From Octopus bimaculoides (lineage: Eukaryota): a stretch of DNA of 43,768 bases. Below are positions 3,180-38,237 of this stretch, piece after piece. Position numbers and translations under genes: made by a program. The DNA lies in contig NC_068982.1 in assembly GCF_001194135.2 (NCBI RefSeq), positions 166,519,839-166,563,606 of the forward strand, written 5' to 3'. The notes under the pieces were generated by a model that made no database searches, had not been told where the DNA came from, and worked only from the letters and a program-made list of their open reading frames with translations. Each line of letters begins with the position of its first letter. Positions within the stretch are counted from its first letter, which is position 1.

Positions 3180-4135
3180 TCATCCACATACTATACATAA
3201 TTTCCAGCATCCTAGAAACTATGACACTTCAAGTCAGTTGACTGGTAAAAACCCTATTAGTTAGCATAACTAACTATTCCTGGCTGTGTAAATGTTTCAT
3301 TTAACTCTTCAGATACAGTTAAGAGGACTGAAACCATCCTTTCCGGCACATCTCTTCACATATTCTACACAGCCAAAACTCATACCCAACCCTGCTGTGC
3401 TGCAACAATTTGGGTAAAGAATATGGCCTACAAAGCTTGAAGAAAATAATCCACTCTAACCTATTAGAGAAGTTTTACTGACTGTTGCAATTTCTGCAAA
3501 GCCATCATCCACAGCATAAATGATGCCTACATGTGTAACAAAGCCTGAAAGTTTCCCCATCTCTGAAACTGCATCCCATCTTTCTGGTCCCTTGCTAAAA
3601 ATGATTTTTTACAACTATGTGGAATTGTCTTTCTTTCCACTTCTCAACAATGATGGCTCTGACAACAGCATTCTGCAGAGAAAGTAGCCACATTTGCTGG
3701 TTCCTTTGGGTCCAGCTCCACATTGCACACATTAAGTAAAGTTTCTTCCTCCAAAATGATTCCTCTCCATTGCATCCAGCACACCACAATATGCACATCC
3801 ACACCAAATGTGAACGTGGTTCACACCACCAACCCAGAGTATTTCTTCCATAACCTTCAGTACAGCCCAAAACTAGTCCCTACTCTCACCAAATTTTTCA
3901 ATCTCTCACTCTCTACAGGGATCTACCTTGATCTTTTGAAAGACACAACAATATGCCATAGTTTCAAGAAGGCCAACTCCTCTGATCCTGCTATACACCT
4001 ATGCCTCATCATTTCTAACATTCCAACTGTGATGGAAATAGTCATGAACAACCATCTTCTCCACCACCTTGAATTTCTCTCCCTTCTTAATGATAACTCT
4101 TATGGCTTCTGTCTACCACCAACAGTGTTATTTTA
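3180..4135 (+). mobile_element. Decayed CR1/L2/Jockey-group LINE fragment, start of RT
   Basis: PKLVPTLTKFFNLSLSTGIY..KKANSSDP..NNHLLHHLEFLSLLNDNSYGF resembles RT domains 0-2 (SLSTGxFP..W..KKGDxSDPxNYRP..LLSDxQYGF). Many stops; boundaries approximate. Confidence 0.75.
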
Positions 4136-4204
4136 TGCAATACAGTAGAATTATCAACAGACTACTTCAACCTGATCAGGCCAAACAGGATAAACATTAC
4201 AAAC

Positions 4205-4329
4205 CTCAAGTATCCCTCCTTTTTGATTGCAAACTTGGATCGTCACCTCAACATTTTTCTCTGATGTCTTAGAGCCTTTGTTAAATTCGCCTTGCATTAA
4301 TGTAATGTAAATTTCATTCCGAACATCAC
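4205..4329 (-). CDS. DOCK1: DOCK-A exon m (125 nt), start of DHR-1/C2: DVRNEIYITLMQGEFNKGSKTSEKNVEVTIQVCNQKGGILE
   Basis: Acceptor ttttttcccccccag, donor gtttgt. Matches [30 protein letters not shown]. Confidence 0.95.
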
Positions 4330-6244
4330 CTGGGGGGGAAAAAAAGCATGCATGTTTATTTCAAGCAGAGCTTACATAACATATATTTAGAATATTATTA
4401 TTTCTGAAATTCTGAGGTAGGACATTTGTTGTTTCTGGAATCAATATCTTTTTAAATGACAACCTAATTAGTACCATGTCTCATAATAGAATATAGCAAT
4501 ATCTAAATGAATATATATCCTTTCAAATTTAAGGCACAGCTCAACCAATCACAGAAACAAGGTTTGCAAATGAAAGAATTATGCCAAAGAAAAACAAGTT
4601 TCCTGGAAGAGAATAGTAAACAGGGTCGATAATAATCCTGGTTCTCATCTAATAACAATTTTCTTGCTCAGCAGCATTGGTAGAATCAAACATTAAACGA
4701 AATGGTTAGAAGTGGGAGATGGGGGCAAACTATTTAGTCAGAAAATCTGGATGAATCAAAAAGTAAAATAATTCTTGAGATCAATAAAATATTTATGGCA
4801 TGAAACAAAATGAAACCAAAACTTAGTTCAAATAATCAACTCAGCAAATGAAATGTCTAATTTTATAACCACTGTTCAGGCTGTAGATTTAATCATAATA
4901 ATAATTAGGATGAATAAAGAAATTACTTGATCATTCTTTTTTCAGGATACACCACATAAACAAAATAAAATGGAAAGTAGAAACTCCAAGTATTTATAAA
5001 GTATTTGAGACAGATACTTATGAAGTAAAAGTAATTTACTATAATTCACTTAAGACTTCTTAAATTAAATATAAAATAAATCATCATCATTTAATGTCTG
5101 CTTTCCATGTTGGCGAATTTATTACAAAAACAACAAAAAACTGAAGATTAGCACTGCAAAACAAACATATTCTTCCATCAAGTAATGAAGTCTAAAACAG
5201 ACAGAACATCATACTGACAGAAAAAGAGACAGAGTATGACAAAATGAATTGTTTCTAAAGCTAAAGATATATTTACAATAACACTACATAATAAAAAGGA
5301 ACAAAGAGAAATATACAACTGTATTTCATATCTAGCGTTTGACAACAAAATACTTTGAAAGAAACAATAATTGACACACAAATAGAGAAGTTGACACCAA
5401 AAGCAGAAATAAACATAAATACTAAGCACACTGTGAAACCTTACCTATATCTTCACTGGTCCAAATGTTTGGAAGGTATAGAGTGCTATGAATTAACATT
5501 AGAAACAAAAAGGAAGTGACTACATGGAGCATTGTCTATAACCTGAATATAAATGATATAATATACAACATAATAACCCAAACATAAATTAGGATAAATT
5601 ATGAAATAAGAAAGATTTGATGTTTTTGTTTTGTCAGCGATGGTTATTCCATTACTATTTTATGCAAATAGCACTCCATAACATTCGATTGTTTCAGTAT
5701 TAGTTGGTTTCAATGCTTTTACTCAGATATAGGATTATTCATTGAGTTTGTATCAGTAAGCAACAGTAGCACATATATAATTGTTTTGTTAGGTAACATT
5801 TGTTCATTCAAGTCCTCCTTTTGGCCTTGAGAAACTATAAGGGAGCTGCTCCAAGACTCAGCCTCAGACCAGAGTTCTCAACTTTTCAATCAGCTCTAGC
5901 AGAGGATCTGTACTATTTCTGAAAATGTGCAGATATAATAATTTGTATGTGACAGTCTATTCCTTATTAACACACAATACAAGTAAAGAATAATCCTTCT
6001 TGCCATCTGAGAGACAACAATGATAAAATAACCAGATAATACTAACTTTATATTAAATATATTTTGTTGCAAGTCATAGATACAAAAATAGTTTCAGAAT
6101 CCTTTAGAACAAAGTATTAACTTTTCACAAAGGTATTATGAATGCTTGGGTTTCCTTTAAAATTTTCTTTGTTAGCTATCTCCTCAGAAATGCTTATTTT
6201 GTGTTCCTTTATGTCTGGTAACTTAATTCAAGAAACGGAGAAAT

Positions 6245-6356
6245 ATAATAAGCACCAGACTAAAATAAGTACTTAGATCAATATGATTGAATCATTGAAG
6301 ACAATGCCCCAACATGGCCACAGTCCAATAACTGAAATCAATAAAAGAATAAAAGC
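6245..6356 (+). mobile_element. SINE type A, 3' part
   Basis: ccccaacatggccacagtccaataactgaaatcaataaaagaataaaag matches the tail of the 8640-9000 copy. Confidence 0.7.
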
Positions 6357-8639
6357 ATGTATACATATGAGTGTGCAAACAAATTAAAGAAAGTAGCACT
6401 CAAAATAATTGGAAGGAGTTTCTAACAACAGTTTGACTTAGCTCCCATCACAAAGTTTGAACATGTAGGTCTTGTATGTCTCATTAGATGCTTAGAGTAA
6501 AATATTAACTAGAAAGCCTCTTAAAAATAAACTATAGAAATGAAATAAATTAAGAAATAAATGAAGATATTACTAGCTGTAGGCAAATGATTCTTCATGC
6601 ATCATTTAGAATCAATTTTTACACTTCCTTACACATAAAAACATAAGTAAGTACTAATTACAAAAATTAAGAAAGTAAAAACAAAAAAAAAGGACAAGAA
6701 AAGGTCATTACATAGATTTCATTAAAAAAACTAAATAAACTTGTCTTTTCTATGATACTTAACAGTAAAGACTACAATGGACTAAAAGCAACCCAAGTTA
6801 AACTAAGTGATGTATTAAGTCTAAGACCCATAACTTGAGTCCAAGAAAATCAATATTCAATCAAAAAATATTTGGTTTTTATATTTAGCTTCTGCACAAG
6901 AGTAAACTAGTCTGGAATTTAAAGGTAAAATGTAACATAATGATACAGTTGGTTAGCATTTTAATATGCAACTGAGTCTTTACATGAAATCATTTGAGTG
7001 AACCAGTAATGTTATGTTAATATTCCTTGTGTAACAAATAATCCTGTAGCTCTGTAATTTCCCTTAATGGACAGTTAGGACAAGGGAAATAATCATTTCT
7101 TCTTGATATTTGGTGGGATTAGTGATTTGAATTTGAAATTAAGGAAGAAGGTAAAAGATGCACAGATTATATATGTTTAATTTTCTTTTTTTATTGCTTA
7201 CTTATAACAAAGTCTTAAAATTCCTAGTCTTAGGTAGTCATGTATAGCATGATTTCATTCTTTTAAAAAAAAGATCTCTTACTTGAAAAACAGGTAATGG
7301 CTAGTGACTGGAAGGGCCGCTATTTGTAAAAATAATGTCTTAATAAGTATCTGTCCAAACAATACTAACATGTAAAAACGGAGATAAAATGAACAGAAAA
7401 TTGGCTGAGAAACAAGACAATATCTGTATAGGTTCCACTGTTGTAGCATATAAAGAAAACATGTATGTAACTTGGCAACTATGTTCACCCTAGTGTCACA
7501 CATTGCACCTGTGTTCATATTAACAAAGGCCGTATTAACATGCTTCTCTTGAATAGATTTACAGGTAATGCATTTTGTGTGTGCATTTTATTATTAACAC
7601 TTAGTCTTCTCTGATTGAGCAGATCTAGGATCAGAGACATTTAAACTGTGATCAGCTCATATTTTTGCAAGGCATACTGTATGCAGAACTACTTTATCCA
7701 ACAACTCTTCTTTTTTTAAGACAGTAGAGTGTGATATATTTGTAGCAGGTTAAATAACCATGCAGAAATTCTTTTATTAAATCATGCGTGGTTTGTAACA
7801 CTCACTGCTAAAAACAAAACGTAATGTAAAATGAGGAGTGTAGAAACAAGTGATTTTAAACTGTTTGTACAGTCACTGTTCTGTTAGAGTGAATGACAAG
7901 CAGGTGCAGTAGGTGTAAAGAGAGCAAGGCTACCTATACTGCATGTTAGTTAAGTATCATCATTGAAATATCAATACTTCCAAGCAGAAATTGGTTAGCT
8001 GGTACTGTCATAAGCAGGTTACCAACTGTTCTGGTTATTTGTAATCTCTTCAGTGAGGACCAGAATCCTTGGATATGACTCCATTGTTTTCTCATATTCT
8101 TTTCCATTGACAGTGCATGCACTTTATCACCTATAACTAATTATTTCATTGACAATATTTGTCCATCTTTTGTCACAACTTTGAAATTCATATCTTCAAT
8201 TTCATGGAAAAGTCAGAGATGTTTAGTAATTTGTAAGAGTTTCATAAATACATGTATTCTTCCTAGAACCATTAGTTTGTTCTCAATTTGAAATGATAGA
8301 CTGTAAGTAACTGGAGTAAAATCACACACACACACAATTCACTCATTTAATATTTTGAAGATAATCTAAGTGAGAACAAATCTTAGCTCAGCAGTCTCGG
8401 TCAATTGGTAAAGTTGAAACATAAGATAAATCTCTATTTTATAGGCTATTATTCAGATTTTAAATTTTGACAAAACAGAATTCATTAAAATTTTTACTGA
8501 AATAATAATTAGGAATTTATGTAAAAGCAGAAATTAATTAATTAATGTGTGTATGTATACACACATACTTGCATTTATTTATTTTTATAAGTAACATTGC
8601 TACATACATGTTTGCTAAGCATTAAATCATATTTTTACA

Positions 8640-9000
8640 TTCAAAACACTCAACCACATGGTTCCAGGTTTCAGTCCCACTGTGTAATACCTTGGGCAAG
8701 TGTCTTCTACTATAGCCTCAAACCAACCAAAGCCGTGTGAGTGGATTTGGTAGATAGAAACTGAAAGAAGCTCAATGTATGTGTGCATGTCTTTGTCTCC
8801 CCACCTCCATATGCTTGACAACAGGTGTTTGTGTGTTTATGCTCTTATAGCTTAGTAGTTTGGCAAAAGAAACCAATAGAATAAGTACCAGGCTGAAAAA
8901 AAAAAGTACTGGGGTCGATTCATTTGACTAAAAATTCTTCAAAGTAGTGCCCCAGCTTGGCCACAATCTAGTGACTGAAACAAGTAAAAGATAAAAGATA
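8640..9000 (+). mobile_element. SINE type A, near full length (tRNA-derived head, conserved body, (TAAAAGA)n tail)
   Basis: Head caaccacatggttccaggtttcagtccc, body ttgggcaagtgtcttctactatagcc..gtgagtggatttggtagatagaaactgaaagaagc, tail ccagcttggccacaatctagtgactgaaacaagtaaaagataaaaga. Pieces recur at 9960, 12945, 15125, 20935 and 22770. Confidence 0.85.
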
Positions 9001-9376
9001 TATGATCATTCTTTGTCCAGTTAACTTTACCATATAAGCATGGATTGGATGGGTCCCACACACACACACACATGACAATATTCAAGTTAGTATCAGGAAT
9101 ATGTAACAAAAGGATGTTTTGGTTGGACAGCTTGATTAAAAAACCTTACCAGTTTGGGAAAATTTGATTGATGACAAAAAATAAATAAATAAATAACAAT
9201 TCTAAACATTAGACATAATATTCTACAAAGAACATGCTAAGACCAGAATAGTTAATTAAGACAACAAAGGAGGCAAGAACGAAGTCATGCTGTGAGCATA
9301 TAAATGATGACACTTGAGCTATTTCACTGCAGTGGCAGCAACAACATAAAAAAACAATTGGTAGATCGCCACTTAC

Positions 9377-9382
9377 CTTCTA
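9377..9382 (-). CDS. DOCK1: Candidate alternative microexon TAGAAG (6 nt; 3-nt AAG form via the tandem acceptor), adding VE or E to ..IMP^GDVRN..
   Basis: Minus strand reads ttaactga-t(n)-tgcttctgttctgttctgttctctgtag|TAGAAG|gtaagtg. Both forms are frame-preserving and stop-free in this phase-1 intron. No transcript evidence available. Confidence 0.6.
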
Positions 9383-9500
9383 CTACAGAGAACAGAACAG
9401 AACAGAAGCAAAAAAAAAAAAATCAGTTAAGATGCAACATGGAATTAATGAGGTGAGAAATGAAAGAAGTTTGCATGCATGTAGGTGCATGGTATTCATA

Positions 9501-9542
<42 letters not shown>

Positions 9543-9574
9543 GGAGAGAGAGAGGGAGAGAGAGAGAGAGAGAG
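9501..9574. repeat. (TG)n-(GA)n compound microsatellite, read as a CU/CA tract upstream of the candidate microexon
   Basis: Seen directly. Confidence 0.95.
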
Positions 9575-9959
9575 AATGTGAAATGGAAATGAAAAAGGGC
9601 AGTTTTGTAGATAACAAAGAAAAGGAACACAATCAATAAACATAAACCTTGTAAAGCTATATTGTATTTAGTGGAGAAACCTCAACCTTCCAACATAAAT
9701 GACAACTTGACTGCAGATTTCCAATTAATTAGTGAACTCGACTACCAACATTAAAAAAAAAAGTTTAGATATAATGAATGGGCTACCAATTCATGGAATC
9801 TGATTTAACATTTAGTTTTTAACCCACTTGACACAATTAGAAATAAGAAAATTGATTATATTCTTAAAAAGGTAAGATTACCAAATTACTTTTTAAAATG
9901 TAAATACTTGACAATAATATACAAAGTTTCATAACATTAGTGTAAAAAATTTTAACATA

Positions 9960-10022
9960 TCAAGGCAGTGCTCCAGCAAGGCCACAGTCAAATGACTGAA
10001 ACAAGTAAAAGAATAAAAGAAT
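9960..10022 (+). mobile_element. SINE type A tail fragment
   Basis: gcagtgctccagcaaggccacagtcaaatgactgaaacaagtaaaagaataaaaga. Confidence 0.75.
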
Positions 10023-10389
10023 AATCTTTTTCTTTTTGTTATGTTCTTTGAAAGCAGAACCACAATTCAGTTATCCTGTATGTTTCAGGTGTTTATTGTT
10101 ATTAATAATTCTAAACAATTAATTAAAGGTGATAATCACCTTTCTTATACAAATATCACCACATAATATTCTTTGAACAAAATACAAAGCTCTAGTTCAT
10201 TCCATTACCACTTAAAGATAGGTTCTACTCTCATTTTATATTTTAGTGGTTGGCAACAGGAAAAGCAGAAAGTTATATCACATATTGCATCACTTTATGC
10301 AAATGTTTTCTTAAATTCATTCAACTATTACTACAAGAGAATTAAGTAACAAGGACAGATGTGTAAAGAAGTGCCGATCTCTAACTGTA

Positions 10390-10965
10390 GAGGGAACCTG
10401 TGGCAGAGGTAAATCTAGGAAGACATGGGACAAGGTGGTGAAGCAGGATCTTCAAACTTTGGGCCTCACAGAGGCAATGACCAGTGACCAAGACCTTTGG
10501 TAATACGCTGTACCTGAGAAGACCCATCAAGCCAAGTGAAATCATAGTTGTGGCTGATGCTGATCTCACGTAACTCACATGTAAAGAGCACCTTTCAAGC
10601 GTTGGGCCTCATGGAAGCAATGTGGCTGATGCCAATGGCACATGTAAAAAGCACCTTTCGAGTATTGGGTCCCACAGAAGTATTGACAAATGACCAAGAC
10701 CTTTGGCATTATGAGAAGACCCATCAAACTAAGCAAAATTGTAGTTGTGGCAGATACCAGTGTCAGGCAACTGGCACATAAAAGCACTCATTACACTCTC
10801 GGAGTGGTTGGTGTTAGAAAAGGCATCCAGCTGTGAAAAACATACCAAATCAGACTGGAGTCTAGTGTAGCACCTCAGCTTGCCAGACCTGATCAACCTG
10901 TCCAATCCATGCCAGCATGGACAACGGACATTAAATAATGATGATGATGATGATGATAATGATGA
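10390..10965 (+). mobile_element. RTE-type LINE 3' end with internal duplications and (GAT)n tail
   Basis: ORF end (EGTCGRGKSRKTW..LGLTEAMTSDQDLW..EKTHQAK*) is partly repeated three times. It is followed by the ggagtggttgg..ggcatccagc motif, the ccatgccagcatgg stem-loop and (GAT)n. Confidence 0.85.
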
Positions 10966-12285
10966 ACACAACCCTCCACTCTACAAAGTATAAAACACAA
11001 CTTTAGTCTCTTTCTCATTTTGAACAGACATATGGATGACAGAATTAAATTGGCAACTTTACCATGACAAATGGTTCTGTGGAATAACAAATTCCTTAAC
11101 CTAAATTGTTAAAGTTGCAAACTATTGTTTCTAACTCATACATCAATTTTAAGATACACTAAAACTAAAATTGGAGTTAAATTAACTCTATAAATTAACA
11201 ATACATCCTAGGAAGATTAATAAAATTTGTTATAACTAAAAATGTCACCCATTTAAGAGCAGTGAAAATTCCTATGTTAATTTCTTCAAGACAATCATTG
11301 TCTTTAAGGGTGTGCACATGCATTAAAAAGACATTCAGAACAATGATATTTTTGGTAATTTAAAAAATTTTTCATTAAAGTTTTAGTTAAGTTAGTGCTA
11401 ATATATTTAATACAGGGAGTGTTAAAAAGATAATGCTTTGCTGATGAGGCCACACAAAGACAGAAATATATTTGATGTTGTCTTCTTTACTTTACAAAAT
11501 GATAAAAATATATGTCACTGACTTACAAAGTTTCCTCCTACCCCATATAGCCCTAGTTAGTTTTTAATACTCCTGCATTGAATATGTTAACATAACTATT
11601 GTTTTTTATGTAAATTGTAAATGACTTCTCTGAATAATTTATTCTCTATATATTTCGAGCCTTGATCAAAACACCTTATAAGGCTATTATATATTATAGA
11701 AAGGACAACGCCCAGAGCTACTTTAAACTCTTTAAAACTGATGAAACAGAACACATAAATAAATTGGTGTGGTTAGTGAGGTTAATTTGCAGTGTATATT
11801 GCTGAAGATTAGTAATTAGGAGAAATATAGATAAAGAATAAATACAAGATAGAAGAATTAATGTTTAGTATTGGGGTCTGAGGAGTAAGATACAATAGAG
11901 CTGACAGGAGGAGTACAGGTAATTGTGCTGGGTGTTTTATACAGTACTGGCATTGAAATGTTGAGTTCAGATGAACAAAAGCTTTCTAAACTAGTGAAAG
12001 AAGAGACAGAAGGTAAACAAAGCTTGGTGACAGGTAGAGTGGTTGGAAAGTCAGTGAGTATAAACATTCCCTTTGATGTAATATAGAATGAGTAAATACA
12101 TGTGAGCATGATCCTAAATGAACAAGCATTATTGTACTGCAGAATTCATTTTGGTGAGACAGCTGCATTATTGCAGGTGAACCTCAACACGTGGTTGCAT
12201 TATGTCAAACATGCAAATAGTGTTATAGTATGGACTATGTCTGAGGGGATAGTTGCTCTATCCTAAATGTGTGGAAAGTATAGGG

Positions 12286-12387
12286 GTGTGTGTGTGTGTG
12301 TGCGTGTGTGTGTGTGTGTGTGTGGTGTGTGTGTNNNNNNNNNNGTGTGTGTGTGCGTGTGTGTGTGTGTGTGTGTGGTGTGTGTGT
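12286..12387. repeat. (GT)n microsatellite spanning a 10-N gap
   Basis: Seen directly; N at 12335-12344. Confidence 0.95.
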
Positions 12388-12447
12388 ATATTTGATGCTA
12401 GAGTTCACCTAAAATAATTTCTCATAAAAGTAATAAGTCTCACTTAC

Positions 12448-12529
12448 CTGGCATGATAACCTCTGGAAAGCCAATTTTACGAGATATTGCTGTCCCAGGT
12501 AAAACTAAATGTGGGTAATCATCCCAGAT
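12448..12529 (-). CDS. DOCK1: DOCK-A exon l (82 nt): [27 protein letters not shown](G)
   Basis: Acceptor tttacatgcag, donor gtaagt. Matches [24 protein letters not shown]. Confidence 0.95.
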
Positions 12530-12944
12530 CTGCATGTAAAAACATATATAAATACATATCATCATCATTGCCGAAATAACTTCTAACAAATGCAAAATGT
12601 CACAAATTTTGAGGAGCAGAGGTCAATCAGTTAAATCAACCATAGGAATTGTCTTGTACTTATTCTATCCCAAAAGAATGCGAGGAAAATTCAAGTAGTT
12701 AAGGTTACTGAACTTTCCTCTTTTCACATTGTCAGTAGCTTCTCTGTCTTCTTTATTTGTTATTTTACTTTTGTATCACCATGCTTCAAGCAAACTACAA
12801 TGCTCTTCACTCAGAATGTAAAGAATCACAACTAAAAACTGCAAGTGTTTATTAAAGTTTTTGCTTCTCTACGAATTATGCCAACCACTGCATTTAATAA
12901 AACAAAACTATATAATCATATATATAATATAATCATATATACAA

Positions 12945-12995
12945 AGCTGTGCCCCAGCATGGCCACAGTATAATGACTGAAACAAGTGAAAGTTG
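12945..12995 (+). mobile_element. SINE type A tail fragment
   Basis: gccccagcatggccacagtataatgactgaaacaagt. Confidence 0.7.
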
Positions 12996-13244
12996 AAAGC
13001 TAATGATCATAAGTATGTATATATAACCAAAACTCTAATCAAGCTGAGGGATCGATCTAAGCTGATAGAAAATTTTTTTAAATGCCAATTTGGATAAGTT
13101 TTAATAAAAATGTTAATTTATTGTTGATTTTGAGCAATATTATCATTTAAAACTGACAATTCCCTCTCTACACTCTCATTCGCTATGAACACATCCTCTT
13201 TTTCTGTTTCATCTGATTTTCACCATTGAAGTAAAACTGAAACT

Positions 13245-13672
13245 GTAGCTGTGGCCAGTGCCCCCCTGATTGGCTCCCATTCCAGTGGCATGTAAAATGC
13301 ACCATTTGAATGTGGTTGATGCCAGTGCCCTCTGACTGGCTCCCATGCTGATGGCACGTAAAAAGCATTGTCCAAACATGGCTGATGCCAGTGTCCGCTG
13401 ACTGGCTCCTGTGCTGGTGGTACGTAAAAAGCACTATCCAAACATGATCGATGCCAGGGTCACCTGACTGGCTTCTGTGCCAGTGGCATGTAAAAAGCAC
13501 CCACTACATTCTTGGAGTGGTTGGCGTTTAGAAGGGCATCCAGCTGTAGAAACATTGCCAGATCAGATTTGAGCCTGGTGCAGTTGCTGGCTTCCCAAAC
13601 CTCAGCCAAACTGTCCAACCCATGCCAGCATGGAAAACGGATGTTAAATGATGATGATGAGGAACTTAGATT
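13245..13672 (+). mobile_element. RTE-type LINE 3' UTR fragment with four ~66-bp tandem units and (GAT)n tail
   Basis: Units start at 13254, 13321, 13387 and 13453. The 3' end is the same as in the 10390 and 19925 copies. Confidence 0.85.
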
Positions 13673-19924: not shown

Positions 19925-20468
19925 AAAGTACCTTTCAATCATTGGGCAATATACTGTGTTTGAGAAGACCTGTTGAGTCAAGTGAAATCATTGTCATGGC
20001 CGATACCAGTACCGCCTCACTGGCACCCATGCTGGTGGCACGTAAAAAGCAGCATTCGAGTGTAGTCAATGCCAGTCCCACTGCACTGGCTCCCATGCTG
20101 GTGGCACGTAAAAAGCACTGTATGAGCATGGTCGATGCCAGTGCAGCCTGACTGGTCCCGTGCCGGCGGCATGTAAAAAGCATCATTCAAGTGTGGTTGT
20201 CGCCAGTGTCACCTGACTGGCCTCTGTGCTGGTGGCATGTAAAATGTACCCACTACACTCTTGGAGTGGTTGGTGTTAGGAAAGGCATTCAGCTATAGAA
20301 ACCTTGCCAGATCAGATTGGAGCCTGGTGCAGCCTCCTGGCTTGCCAGTTCTCAGTCAGACCATTCAACCCATGCCAGCATAAAAAGCAGACCTCAAAAG
20401 ATGATGATGATGATGATGATGATGATGANNNNNNNNNNATGATGATGATGATGATGATGATGATGATC
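19925..20468 (+). mobile_element. RTE-type LINE 3' end with four ~66-bp tandem units and a long (GAT)n tail (contains an N gap)
   Basis: Units start at 20005, 20071, 20137 and 20202. Terminal ccatgccagcat stem-loop, then (GAT)n at 20401-20468. Confidence 0.85.
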
Positions 20469-25020: not shown

Positions 25021-25030
25021 NNNNNNNNNN

Positions 25031-33259: not shown

Positions 33260-33292
33260 ATTTTCTTGGATTCTTTTAGCTGCAAGAACATG
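33260..33292 (-). CDS. DOCK1: DOCK-A exon e (33 nt): HVLAAKRIQEN
   Basis: Acceptor tttttcag, donor gtaagt, phase 0/0. Fills the HEIASKQVEERL position between exons d and f. Confidence 0.85.
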
Positions 33293-37835: not shown

Positions 37836-38237
37836 CTGAAAAAAAAAAAAAAAAAAAAAAAAAGATAGGTCACAAGACAAATACAAAATGGACTGGTAGA
37901 ACTTAAAANNNNNNNNNNGAACTTAAAAAATATAGACATTTTTGTCTTTCTCTTAACTTAAATGTTTAGCATTATAAATTTCTACAATTTCCTGTATGGA
38001 GTAATTTTTAATATTCACCATTTCCTACAATTAATTACTATTTATTTCCAGGAAATCTTTTAGAATTTCTAGAATTTATTAATTATTCTGAAGCACAGTA
38101 TTAGGAGACCATTGCATCCATATTGAAAAACTGGGCTGGGAAATAAAATCTATGAAGAAAAAAAGTGACAAAAGTAAATACCCTCCCCCTCCCTGTCATT
38201 AAACATGTGTACTGTAAACTAAAAACTGATTACTTAC

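What the first reader, a model, noticed from the sequence alone, without database searches (positions are those of the whole stretch)
9280..9600. Hidden 6-nt/3-nt in-frame microexon at the DHR-1 boundary of the DOCK-A gene, with neural-microexon-type regulatory context
Seen: inside the 8.1-kb phase-1 intron between exons l and m, the minus strand has a branch-like ttaac, a T-run, and tgc ttctgttctgttctgttctctgtag. TAGAAG (9382-9377) follows, then a perfect GTAAGT donor. The tandem acceptor (TAG at 9382-9380) allows a 3-nt form, AAG. Both keep frame without a stop: IMP-VE-GDVRN or IMP-E-GDVRN, immediately before the first strand of the phospholipid-binding DHR-1 domain. Also seen: a UGC about 25 nt upstream of the AG, UGCAUG and many YCAY words upstream, a long CU tract, and a GCAUG about 90 nt downstream of the donor. 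Established: bilaterian neural microexons controlled by the eMIC domain (SRRM3/4; Srrm234 in invertebrates) are 3n in length and carry UGC in the pyrimidine tract; GCAUG is the RBFOX motif, YCAY the NOVA motif, and CU tracts bind PTB. Inference: a neuron-specific switch that could tune DOCK-A membrane targeting. Gene predictors would usually miss it.
Basis: partly seen in the sequence, partly recalled or inferred. Interest (0 to 1): 0.85.

Follow-up and report, generated by a model that had tools for sequence, protein, structure and literature searches.

The report
Unproven six-base exon in DOCK intron
A long intron of an octopus-type DOCK1/2/5 gene holds six bases flanked by textbook splice signals that could be a brain-type microexon, but nothing reachable here shows they are ever spliced in, so a chance look-alike is somewhat more likely.

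Summary
On the minus strand, AG (9384-9383) is followed by TAGAAG (9382-9377) and then GTAAGT (9376-9371). This lies 3,065 nt into the 8,118-nt phase-1 intron between "...EVIMP" and "GDVRN...". The gene belongs to the DOCK-A group (DOCK5 E=7e-31), and the junction sits at the N-terminal edge of DHR-1. Both the 6-nt and the 3-nt forms keep the reading frame.

The site is unusual. It is the only strict hit on either strand. It ends the longest AG-free run in the window (263 nt). It has the layout branch point, T13, UGC, AG, and two GCAUG lie within 140 nt downstream.

However, this class of pattern is expected about 0.16-0.27 times per window by chance. The "regulatory" tracts are ordinary simple repeats. 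I could reach no transcript and no orthologous intron, because the databases hold only genomic exon fragments from cephalopods.

My rough estimates are: unused pseudo-exon about 0.55, genuine alternatively spliced microexon about 0.3, recursive splice site about 0.05. If it is real, it is a new member of a known kind, a neural microexon in a DOCK exchange factor. A search of public octopus brain RNA-seq for two junction strings would decide the matter.

The parts
12448..12529 (-). Exon l of the DOCK-A gene. It encodes [27 protein letters not shown] plus the first base (G) of the next codon. Its donor is CAG|GTAAGT.
   Evidence: matches DOCK5 residues 422-445
4330..12447 (-). The 8,118-nt phase-1 intron that hosts the candidate.
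   Evidence: a more distant cephalopod (L001-L003) has the same phase-1 intron position
9501..9575 (-). The (CT)30 and (CA)8 simple repeats.
9473..9479 (-). Upstream UGCAUGC word, about 95 nt before the AG.
9426..9430 (-). Branch-point-like uuaAc, with the A 45 nt upstream of the exon.
   Evidence: a motif match only
9389..9422 (-). Pyrimidine tract: T13 (9422-9410), UGC (9410-9408) and (TTCTG)3.8 (9407-9389).
9380..9384 (-). Tandem acceptor AG-T-AG. The AG at 9384-9383 gives the 6-nt form and the AG at 9381-9380 gives the 3-nt form.
   Evidence: the AG at 9384 ends the longest AG-free run in the window
9377..9382 (-). Candidate microexon TAGAAG (adds Val-Glu). The 3-nt form AAG at 9379-9377 adds Glu.
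9371..9376 (-). Consensus donor GTAAGT after AAG.
   Evidence: 3 of 10 real donors of this gene have the same hexamer
9233..9290 (-). Two downstream GCAUG words, at 9290-9286 and 9237-9233.
4205..4329 (-). Exon m, encoding (G)DVRNEIYITLMQGEFNKGSKTSEKNVEVTIQVCNQKGGILE, the start of DHR-1.
   Evidence: the homologue P0004 carries Pfam DOCK-C2 PF14429

Best explanation
The site is most likely a splice-site look-alike, a pseudo-exon that is skipped in all or nearly all transcripts.

Shown: a 263-nt pyrimidine-rich, AG-free stretch ends in TAGTAG. The stretch is built largely from simple repeats: (CT)30, (CA)8, T13 and (TTCTG)4. A consensus GTAAGT lies 6 nt further on.

Inferred: the co-occurrence is fortuitous, the 8.1-kb intron is removed as one unit, and a 6-nt segment is not defined as an exon. 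On this reading the UGC, GCAUG and YCAY words are short motifs without a regulatory role here.
For: - The class of pattern (pyrimidine tract + YAG, an in-frame 3-30 nt, then GTAAGT or GTRAGT) is expected 0.16-0.27 times per strand of this window. A scan over many windows will therefore meet such sites often.
- From my own knowledge, real microexons of 6 nt or less are a small minority of a few hundred to a thousand microexons per genome. This puts prior odds well below 1.
- All the 'regulatory' tracts are simple repeats.
- UGC is present at 30% of acceptor look-alikes.
- YCAY is not clustered.
- The insertion would split the P-G-D-V-R-N motif. That motif is identical in octopus, human DOCK1/DOCK5 and three other invertebrate sequences.
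- SINE-like fragments lie 400-600 nt away on both sides, so this is ordinary repeat-rich deep intron.
Against: - This is the only strict hit on either strand.
- Its AG ends the longest AG-free run in 2 x 43.7 kb. The chance of GTAAGT in a 3n register within 30 nt of one given AG is about 0.4% (10 x 17/43768, using the counts).
- It is the only one of the 40 acceptor look-alikes with an AG-free zone above 85 nt, and the only one with two GCATG within 170 nt downstream.
- Three GCATG within 250 nt occurs in 0.6% of windows.
- The order branch point, pyrimidine tract, UGC, AG is the published microexon layout.
- Real exons of this gene also use microsatellite-like pyrimidine tracts (exons B and C). 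The repeats therefore do not argue against use.
Confidence: 0.55

Rival explanations
1. It is a genuine alternatively spliced microexon, 6 nt with a 3-nt form from the TAGTAG tandem acceptor. Neurons would include it through the Srrm234 eMIC domain binding near the UGC, helped by RBFOX at the downstream GCAUG. Elsewhere it would be skipped, possibly repressed by PTB on the CU tract. Inclusion adds Val-Glu or Glu between Pro and Gly, at the hinge between the preceding C2 fold and DHR-1.
For: - All the sequence-level hallmarks are present: 3n length and open frame, AAG|GTAAGT donor, branch point at -45, T13 then UGC then AG, a 263-nt AG exclusion zone, a CU-rich upstream region and two downstream GCAUG.
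- The upstream exon l has a perfect CAG|GTAAGT donor, as reported for fly eMIC exons.
- The site is the outlier among the 40 look-alike acceptors.
- Other DOCK exchange factors (DOCK3/4 and fly spg) have convergently evolved neural microexons.
- A 3-nt microexon changes phosphoinositide preference in another exchange factor, cytohesin-1 (PMC6314551).
Against: - No RNA evidence and no conservation evidence could be obtained.
- The chance expectation is not negligible, and several supporting features were picked after seeing the site.
- Very short microexons are rare (my own knowledge).
- The site interrupts an invariant motif.
- One GCAUG lies upstream, where RBFOX usually represses (my own knowledge).
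- Other invertebrates have no intron here, so the exon cannot be ancient across bilaterians.
Confidence: 0.3
2. It is a recursive splice site (ratchet point). The third AG (9378-9377) abuts GTAAGT, so exon l could first be joined to a zero-length exon. That junction regenerates CAG|GTAAGT, and the 8.1-kb intron would be removed in two steps (3.07 kb and 5.05 kb), leaving no trace in the mRNA.
For: The sequence ...TAGTAGAAG|GTAAGT places an AG directly against a consensus donor after a long pyrimidine tract. The site divides the intron 3,065 / 5,047 nt.
Against: - The abutting acceptor is AAG, with a disfavoured -3 A, and two YAG acceptors lie 3 and 6 nt upstream and would be met first.
- From my own knowledge, known ratchet points sit in introns of tens of kilobases, and none has been described in molluscs.
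Confidence: 0.05

Closest known systems
eMIC / SRRM3-SRRM4 (Srrm234)-dependent neural microexons of bilaterians
   Same: It shares the 3n length, a strong 5' splice site, a branch point and pyrimidine tract far from the AG, UGC between the tract and the AG, a long AG exclusion zone, a CU-rich upstream intron, and a host gene that is a cytoskeletal exchange factor.
   Different: Inclusion, neural specificity, eMIC dependence and flank conservation are all untested. The pyrimidine and CU tracts here are simple repeats rather than unique conserved sequence.
Neural microexon of DOCK3/DOCK4 and Drosophila sponge (18 nt in the fly)
   Same: It would also be a microexon in a DOCK-family Rac exchange factor, a gene family reported as a site of recurrent microexon evolution.
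   Different: Those exons lie in the catalytic DHR-2 domain of DOCK-B genes and are experimentally supported. This one lies at the DHR-1 edge of a DOCK-A gene and is only predicted.
Cytohesin-1 3-nt microexon (diglycine/triglycine variants)
   Same: It is a 3-nt insertion in an exchange factor next to a phosphoinositide-binding domain, and it changes lipid preference (PMC6314551).
   Different: It is a different protein family and domain (PH rather than a C2-like DHR-1). No lipid-binding data exist for this site.
Intronic pseudo-exons (splice-site pairs that are never used)
   Same: It lies deep in an intron, is flanked by repeats, has no supporting transcript and occurs at roughly the chance rate.
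   Different: Its signals are stronger and more coherent than those of the other 39 look-alike acceptors in the window.
Recursive splice sites (Drosophila ratchet points)
   Same: It has a pyrimidine tract followed by AG|GTAAGT.
   Different: The abutting AG is AAG with competing upstream AGs, and the intron is only 8.1 kb.

Membership tests
DOCK-A subfamily gene (DOCK1/2/5, mbc, ced-5) | Sequence homology across the DHR-1 start, with DOCK1/2/5 as the best matches. | tested here: met
   The exon l+m+n peptide matches DOCK5 (E=7e-31), the DOCK1 DHR-1 crystal chain 3L4C (4e-26) and DOCK2 (1.4e-25). The homologue P0004 carries PF14429 DOCK-C2.
eMIC-dependent neural microexon | Length of 3-27 nt, a multiple of 3, frame-preserving and without a stop. 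| tested here: met
   The 6-nt or 3-nt forms give IMPVEGDVRN or IMPEGDVRN.
eMIC-dependent neural microexon | Strong 5' splice site. | tested here: met
   The donor is AAG|GTAAGT. The same hexamer occurs at 3 of 10 real donors of the gene. No MaxEnt score was computed.
eMIC-dependent neural microexon | Branch point and pyrimidine tract distant from the AG, with UGC between the tract and the AG, and a long AG exclusion zone. | tested here: met
   uuaAc lies at -45, followed by T13, then UGC at -28 to -26, then the AG. The AG-free zone is 263 nt. The branch point is a motif match only.
eMIC-dependent neural microexon | The exon is actually included in mRNA, preferentially in neural tissue. | not testable with these tools
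   The protein collection returned only genomic ORF fragments for this region and no transcript. An 8-tissue O. bimaculoides RNA-seq set exists, but its tables are not held.
eMIC-dependent neural microexon | Inclusion depends on the Srrm234 eMIC domain. | not testable with these tools
   This needs a minigene or a knock-down.
eMIC-dependent neural microexon | Conservation of the exon and its flanking intron in related species. | not testable with these tools
   A close relative exists, aligning at 83% over 1.1 kb around exon m and 91% next to the exon. Its contig for this part of the intron could not be reached. The metagenome scan gave one unrelated hit.
RBFOX-enhanced exon | (U)GCAUG within about 300 nt downstream of the exon. 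| tested here: met
   GCAUG occurs at +87 and +140. The background is 1.17 per kb, and two or more per 250 nt occurs in 2.9% of windows. Binding was not tested. A further UGCAUGC lies upstream.
NOVA-regulated exon | A cluster of YCAY near the exon. | tested here: inconclusive
   There are 5 YCAY in the 116 nt upstream against 2.0 expected, and 4 in the 151 nt downstream against 2.6 expected. There is no tight cluster.
Recursive splice site | A pyrimidine tract plus YAG directly abutting GTAAGT, in a very long intron. | tested here: not met
   The abutting AG is AAG, with two YAG acceptors 3 and 6 nt upstream. The intron is 8,118 nt.

The most novel reading that the evidence does not exclude
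An octopus DOCK-A gene carries a genuine neuron-enriched microexon, 6 nt with a 3-nt form from a TAGTAG tandem acceptor. It inserts Val-Glu or Glu into the otherwise invariant PGDVRN motif at the hinge between the C2 fold and the lipid-binding DHR-1 domain. This would be a lineage-specific, convergent addition to the microexons of DOCK exchange factors.
Probability: 0.3. Interest if true: 0.55.

Novelty: not a real feature. Interest (0 to 1): 0.3.

Why it matters
If the exon is real, it would be the first microexon reported in a DOCK-A gene. It would sit at the boundary of the domain that targets the Rac exchange factor to PIP3-rich membrane.

It would also fit two current themes. One is the recurrent, convergent evolution of neural microexons in the same gene families; DOCK3/4 and spg are a published case. 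The other is the little-studied neural splicing programme of cephalopods.

If it is a look-alike, it is a useful caution. Simple-repeat pyrimidine tracts in repeat-rich cephalopod introns can imitate the whole published microexon architecture, so sequence-only calls need junction reads.

Tried and rejected
1. Transcript evidence. A protein search with the exon l+m peptide gave only five hits. All were genomic ORF fragments from Logan assemblies, and none was a cephalopod transcript.
2. Orthologous intron.
   - Exact look-ups of the two window ORFs that overlap or abut the site found nothing.
   - A six-frame chimeric query covering 8930-9500 and 9586-9900 drew 2,147 word-sharing candidates, none with E <= 10.
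   - The gene caller behind the collection seems to call only coding-like ORFs; each exon contig had a single gene call. I therefore did not spend the last search on wider flanks.
3. Metagenome scan with the 19-nt core. It gave one hit with no flank similarity, so it is a chance match.
4. Contigs of the relatives. L001-L003 (1.5 kb of the intron downstream of exon l in a more distant cephalopod) and L004 (0.45 kb upstream of exon m) contain no similar site, but they do not reach the orthologous position.
5. Transposon origin. The region 9100-9930 has no other copy in the window apart from microsatellites. No target-site duplication of 8 nt or more flanks the plus-strand (AGAAC)4-A13 'tail'. 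Rejected for lack of support.
6. Known RNA families and tRNAs. There are none in 4000-12800, and no tRNA genes in the window.
7. Literature. No paper links a microexon to DOCK1 itself. The octopus splicing dataset has no supplementary tables held.

Full report
**What is there.**
- On the minus strand the window reads ...cttaactga-T13-GC-ttctgttctgttctgttctctgtAG|TAGAAG|GTAAGTggcg... The AG is at 9384-9383, TAGAAG at 9382-9377 and GTAAGT at 9376-9371.
- Tandem Repeats Finder reports (TTCTG)3.8 at 9389-9407, (CT)30 at 9516-9575 and (CA)8 at 9501-9516.
- TGCATGC lies at 9479-9473. GCATG lies at 9290-9286 and at 9237-9233.

**Gene context.**
- Exon l ends ...GTTATCATGCCAG at 12448 with donor GTAAGT. 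Exon m begins GTGATGTTCGG at 4329. The intron is 8,118 nt and phase 1.
- The peptide of exons l, m and the next exon matches human DOCK5 residues 422-520 (E=7e-31), the DOCK1 DHR-1 crystal chain 3L4C and DOCK2. The DOCK-A assignment therefore holds.
- The junction corresponds to DOCK5 P445/G446. The cryo-EM paper on ELMO1-DOCK5-Rac1 modelled DHR-1 from residue 436 and describes a rigid tandem module of a preceding C2 fold and DHR-1 (PMC8294757). The alignment to 3L4C starts at the Met of MPGDVRN.
- Joining the pieces gives IMPGDVRN (skipped), IMPVEGDVRN (6 nt) and IMPEGDVRN (3 nt). If the donor is ignored, the frame reaches a stop 19 codons after the Val-Glu.
- The motif PGDVRN is identical in human DOCK1 and DOCK5 and in three other invertebrate sequences. 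In those three, exons l and m are fused, so the intron is not universal.
- A more distant cephalopod (L001-L003) keeps the same phase-1 intron.

**Is it more than chance?**
- I used a strict definition: at least 80% pyrimidines over 20 nt, then YAG, then 1-30 nt, then GTRAGT. The window has exactly one hit on the two strands together, and it is this site.
- The minus strand has 40 acceptor-like sites and 17 GTAAGT. From these counts the expected number of in-frame pairs is 0.16, or 0.27 with GTRAGT, and 0.03-0.055 for lengths of 3 or 6 nt only. One such site per window is therefore not rare in a genome-wide scan.
- Three further features do make the site an outlier:
  - The AG ends a 263-nt AG-free run, the longest on either strand; the next are 178 and 148 nt.
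  - Among the 40 look-alike acceptors it is the only one with an AG-free zone above 85 nt, and the only one with two GCATG within 170 nt downstream.
  - Three GCATG within 250 nt occurs in 0.6% of windows.
- UGC is uninformative, being present at 12 of the 40 look-alikes. YCAY is only mildly raised.
- I chose these three further features after seeing the site, so they deserve a discount.

**Comparison with real exons of the same gene.**
- Ten exons could be delimited. Three have GTAAGT donors.
- Two have pyrimidine tracts that are themselves simple repeats: a long T run (about 27 T) for exon C and a CT-rich tract for exon B. The repeat nature of the tract therefore does not count against use.

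**Comparison with the published architecture.**
- SRRM3/4-dependent microexons have strong 5' splice sites. Their strong branch point and pyrimidine tract lie far from the AG, and a UGC lies between the tract and the AG in 74-79% of cases (10.1101/2024.09.17.613571).
- Fly eMIC exons add long AG exclusion zones, CU-rich tracts and a strong upstream 5' splice site (10.1101/2021.02.24.432780).
- The candidate matches each of these at the sequence level.

**What could not be tested.**
- The protein collection contains only genomic ORF fragments from cephalopods for this region.
- One fragment comes from a close relative whose intron aligns to the window at 83%, rising to 91% next to exon m. Its contig for the candidate region could not be reached by exact ORF look-up or by a six-frame query.
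- A metagenome scan with the 19-nt core gave one unrelated hit.
- An 8-tissue O. bimaculoides RNA-seq and vast-tools dataset exists, but its tables are not held.

**Weighing.** The priors are rough and come from my own knowledge: about 0.5-1% of long introns in such genes host a microexon, and only a small share of those are 6 nt or shorter. Likelihoods come from the window counts. With these, the core signals alone give odds of a few percent. Adding the UGC position, the AG exclusion zone and the GCAUG pair, with a discount for post hoc choice, raises this to about 12-35%. My estimates are:
- unused pseudo-exon: 0.55
- genuine alternatively spliced microexon: 0.3
- recursive splice site using the third AG (AAG|GTAAGT): 0.05
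- other: the remainder

Neural specificity and an effect on membrane targeting are further inferences beyond that. The nearest functional analogy is the 3-nt microexon of cytohesin-1, which switches phosphoinositide preference (PMC6314551). The nearest family precedent is the DOCK3/4 and sponge microexon in DHR-2.

**Verdict.**
- I file the site as probably not a functional feature. It remains a worthwhile and cheaply testable candidate.
- If real, it is a new member of a known kind.

Noticed in passing
window 33260-33279 (minus strand): A 20-nt segment, CTAAAAGAATCCAAGAAAAT, has a good acceptor (tatttttcagcatgttcttgcag), a GTAAGT donor and a GCATG 10 nt before the AG. One frame reads AKRIQEN, which from memory resembles a stretch of vertebrate DOCK5 (not checked with a tool). 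It may be a real short exon of the gene, but its phase relative to the neighbouring exon was not resolved.
   Followed up: partly
window 4340-4355 (minus strand); L004 around 400-420: A GCATGC sits about 20 nt before the acceptor of exon m. It reads GAATGC in the close relative, so this RBFOX-like word is not conserved next to a real exon.
   Followed up: yes
window about 12942-13010, 9960-10020, 8939-9009 and about 6331 (minus strand): Four copies of a SINE-like fragment (about 84-85% identical for the three aligned copies). Each contains ...ttttacttgtttcag|TCATTnGACTGT and so contributes a pyrimidine tract plus CAG acceptor look-alike in the sense orientation of the gene. Two of them flank the candidate at 400-600 nt.
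   Followed up: partly
window 13254-13501 and 19995-20244: Two arrays of a 66-nt tandem repeat, 3.4-3.7 copies at 73-79% identity, sharing the motif GGCACGTAAAAAGCACCAT. They are probably part of a repeated element.
   Followed up: no
window 12335-12344, 20429-20438, 25021-25030, 37909-37918: Four runs of exactly 10 N. At least three lie inside or beside simple-sequence or low-complexity runs. They are probably assembly gaps or masking.
   Followed up: no
P0001-P0003 (Logan genomic ORFs); L001-L003 around 726-855: The intron between exons l and m is absent in three other invertebrate DOCK-A genes, where one ORF spans the junction. It is present at the same codon phase in a more distant cephalopod.
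   Followed up: partly
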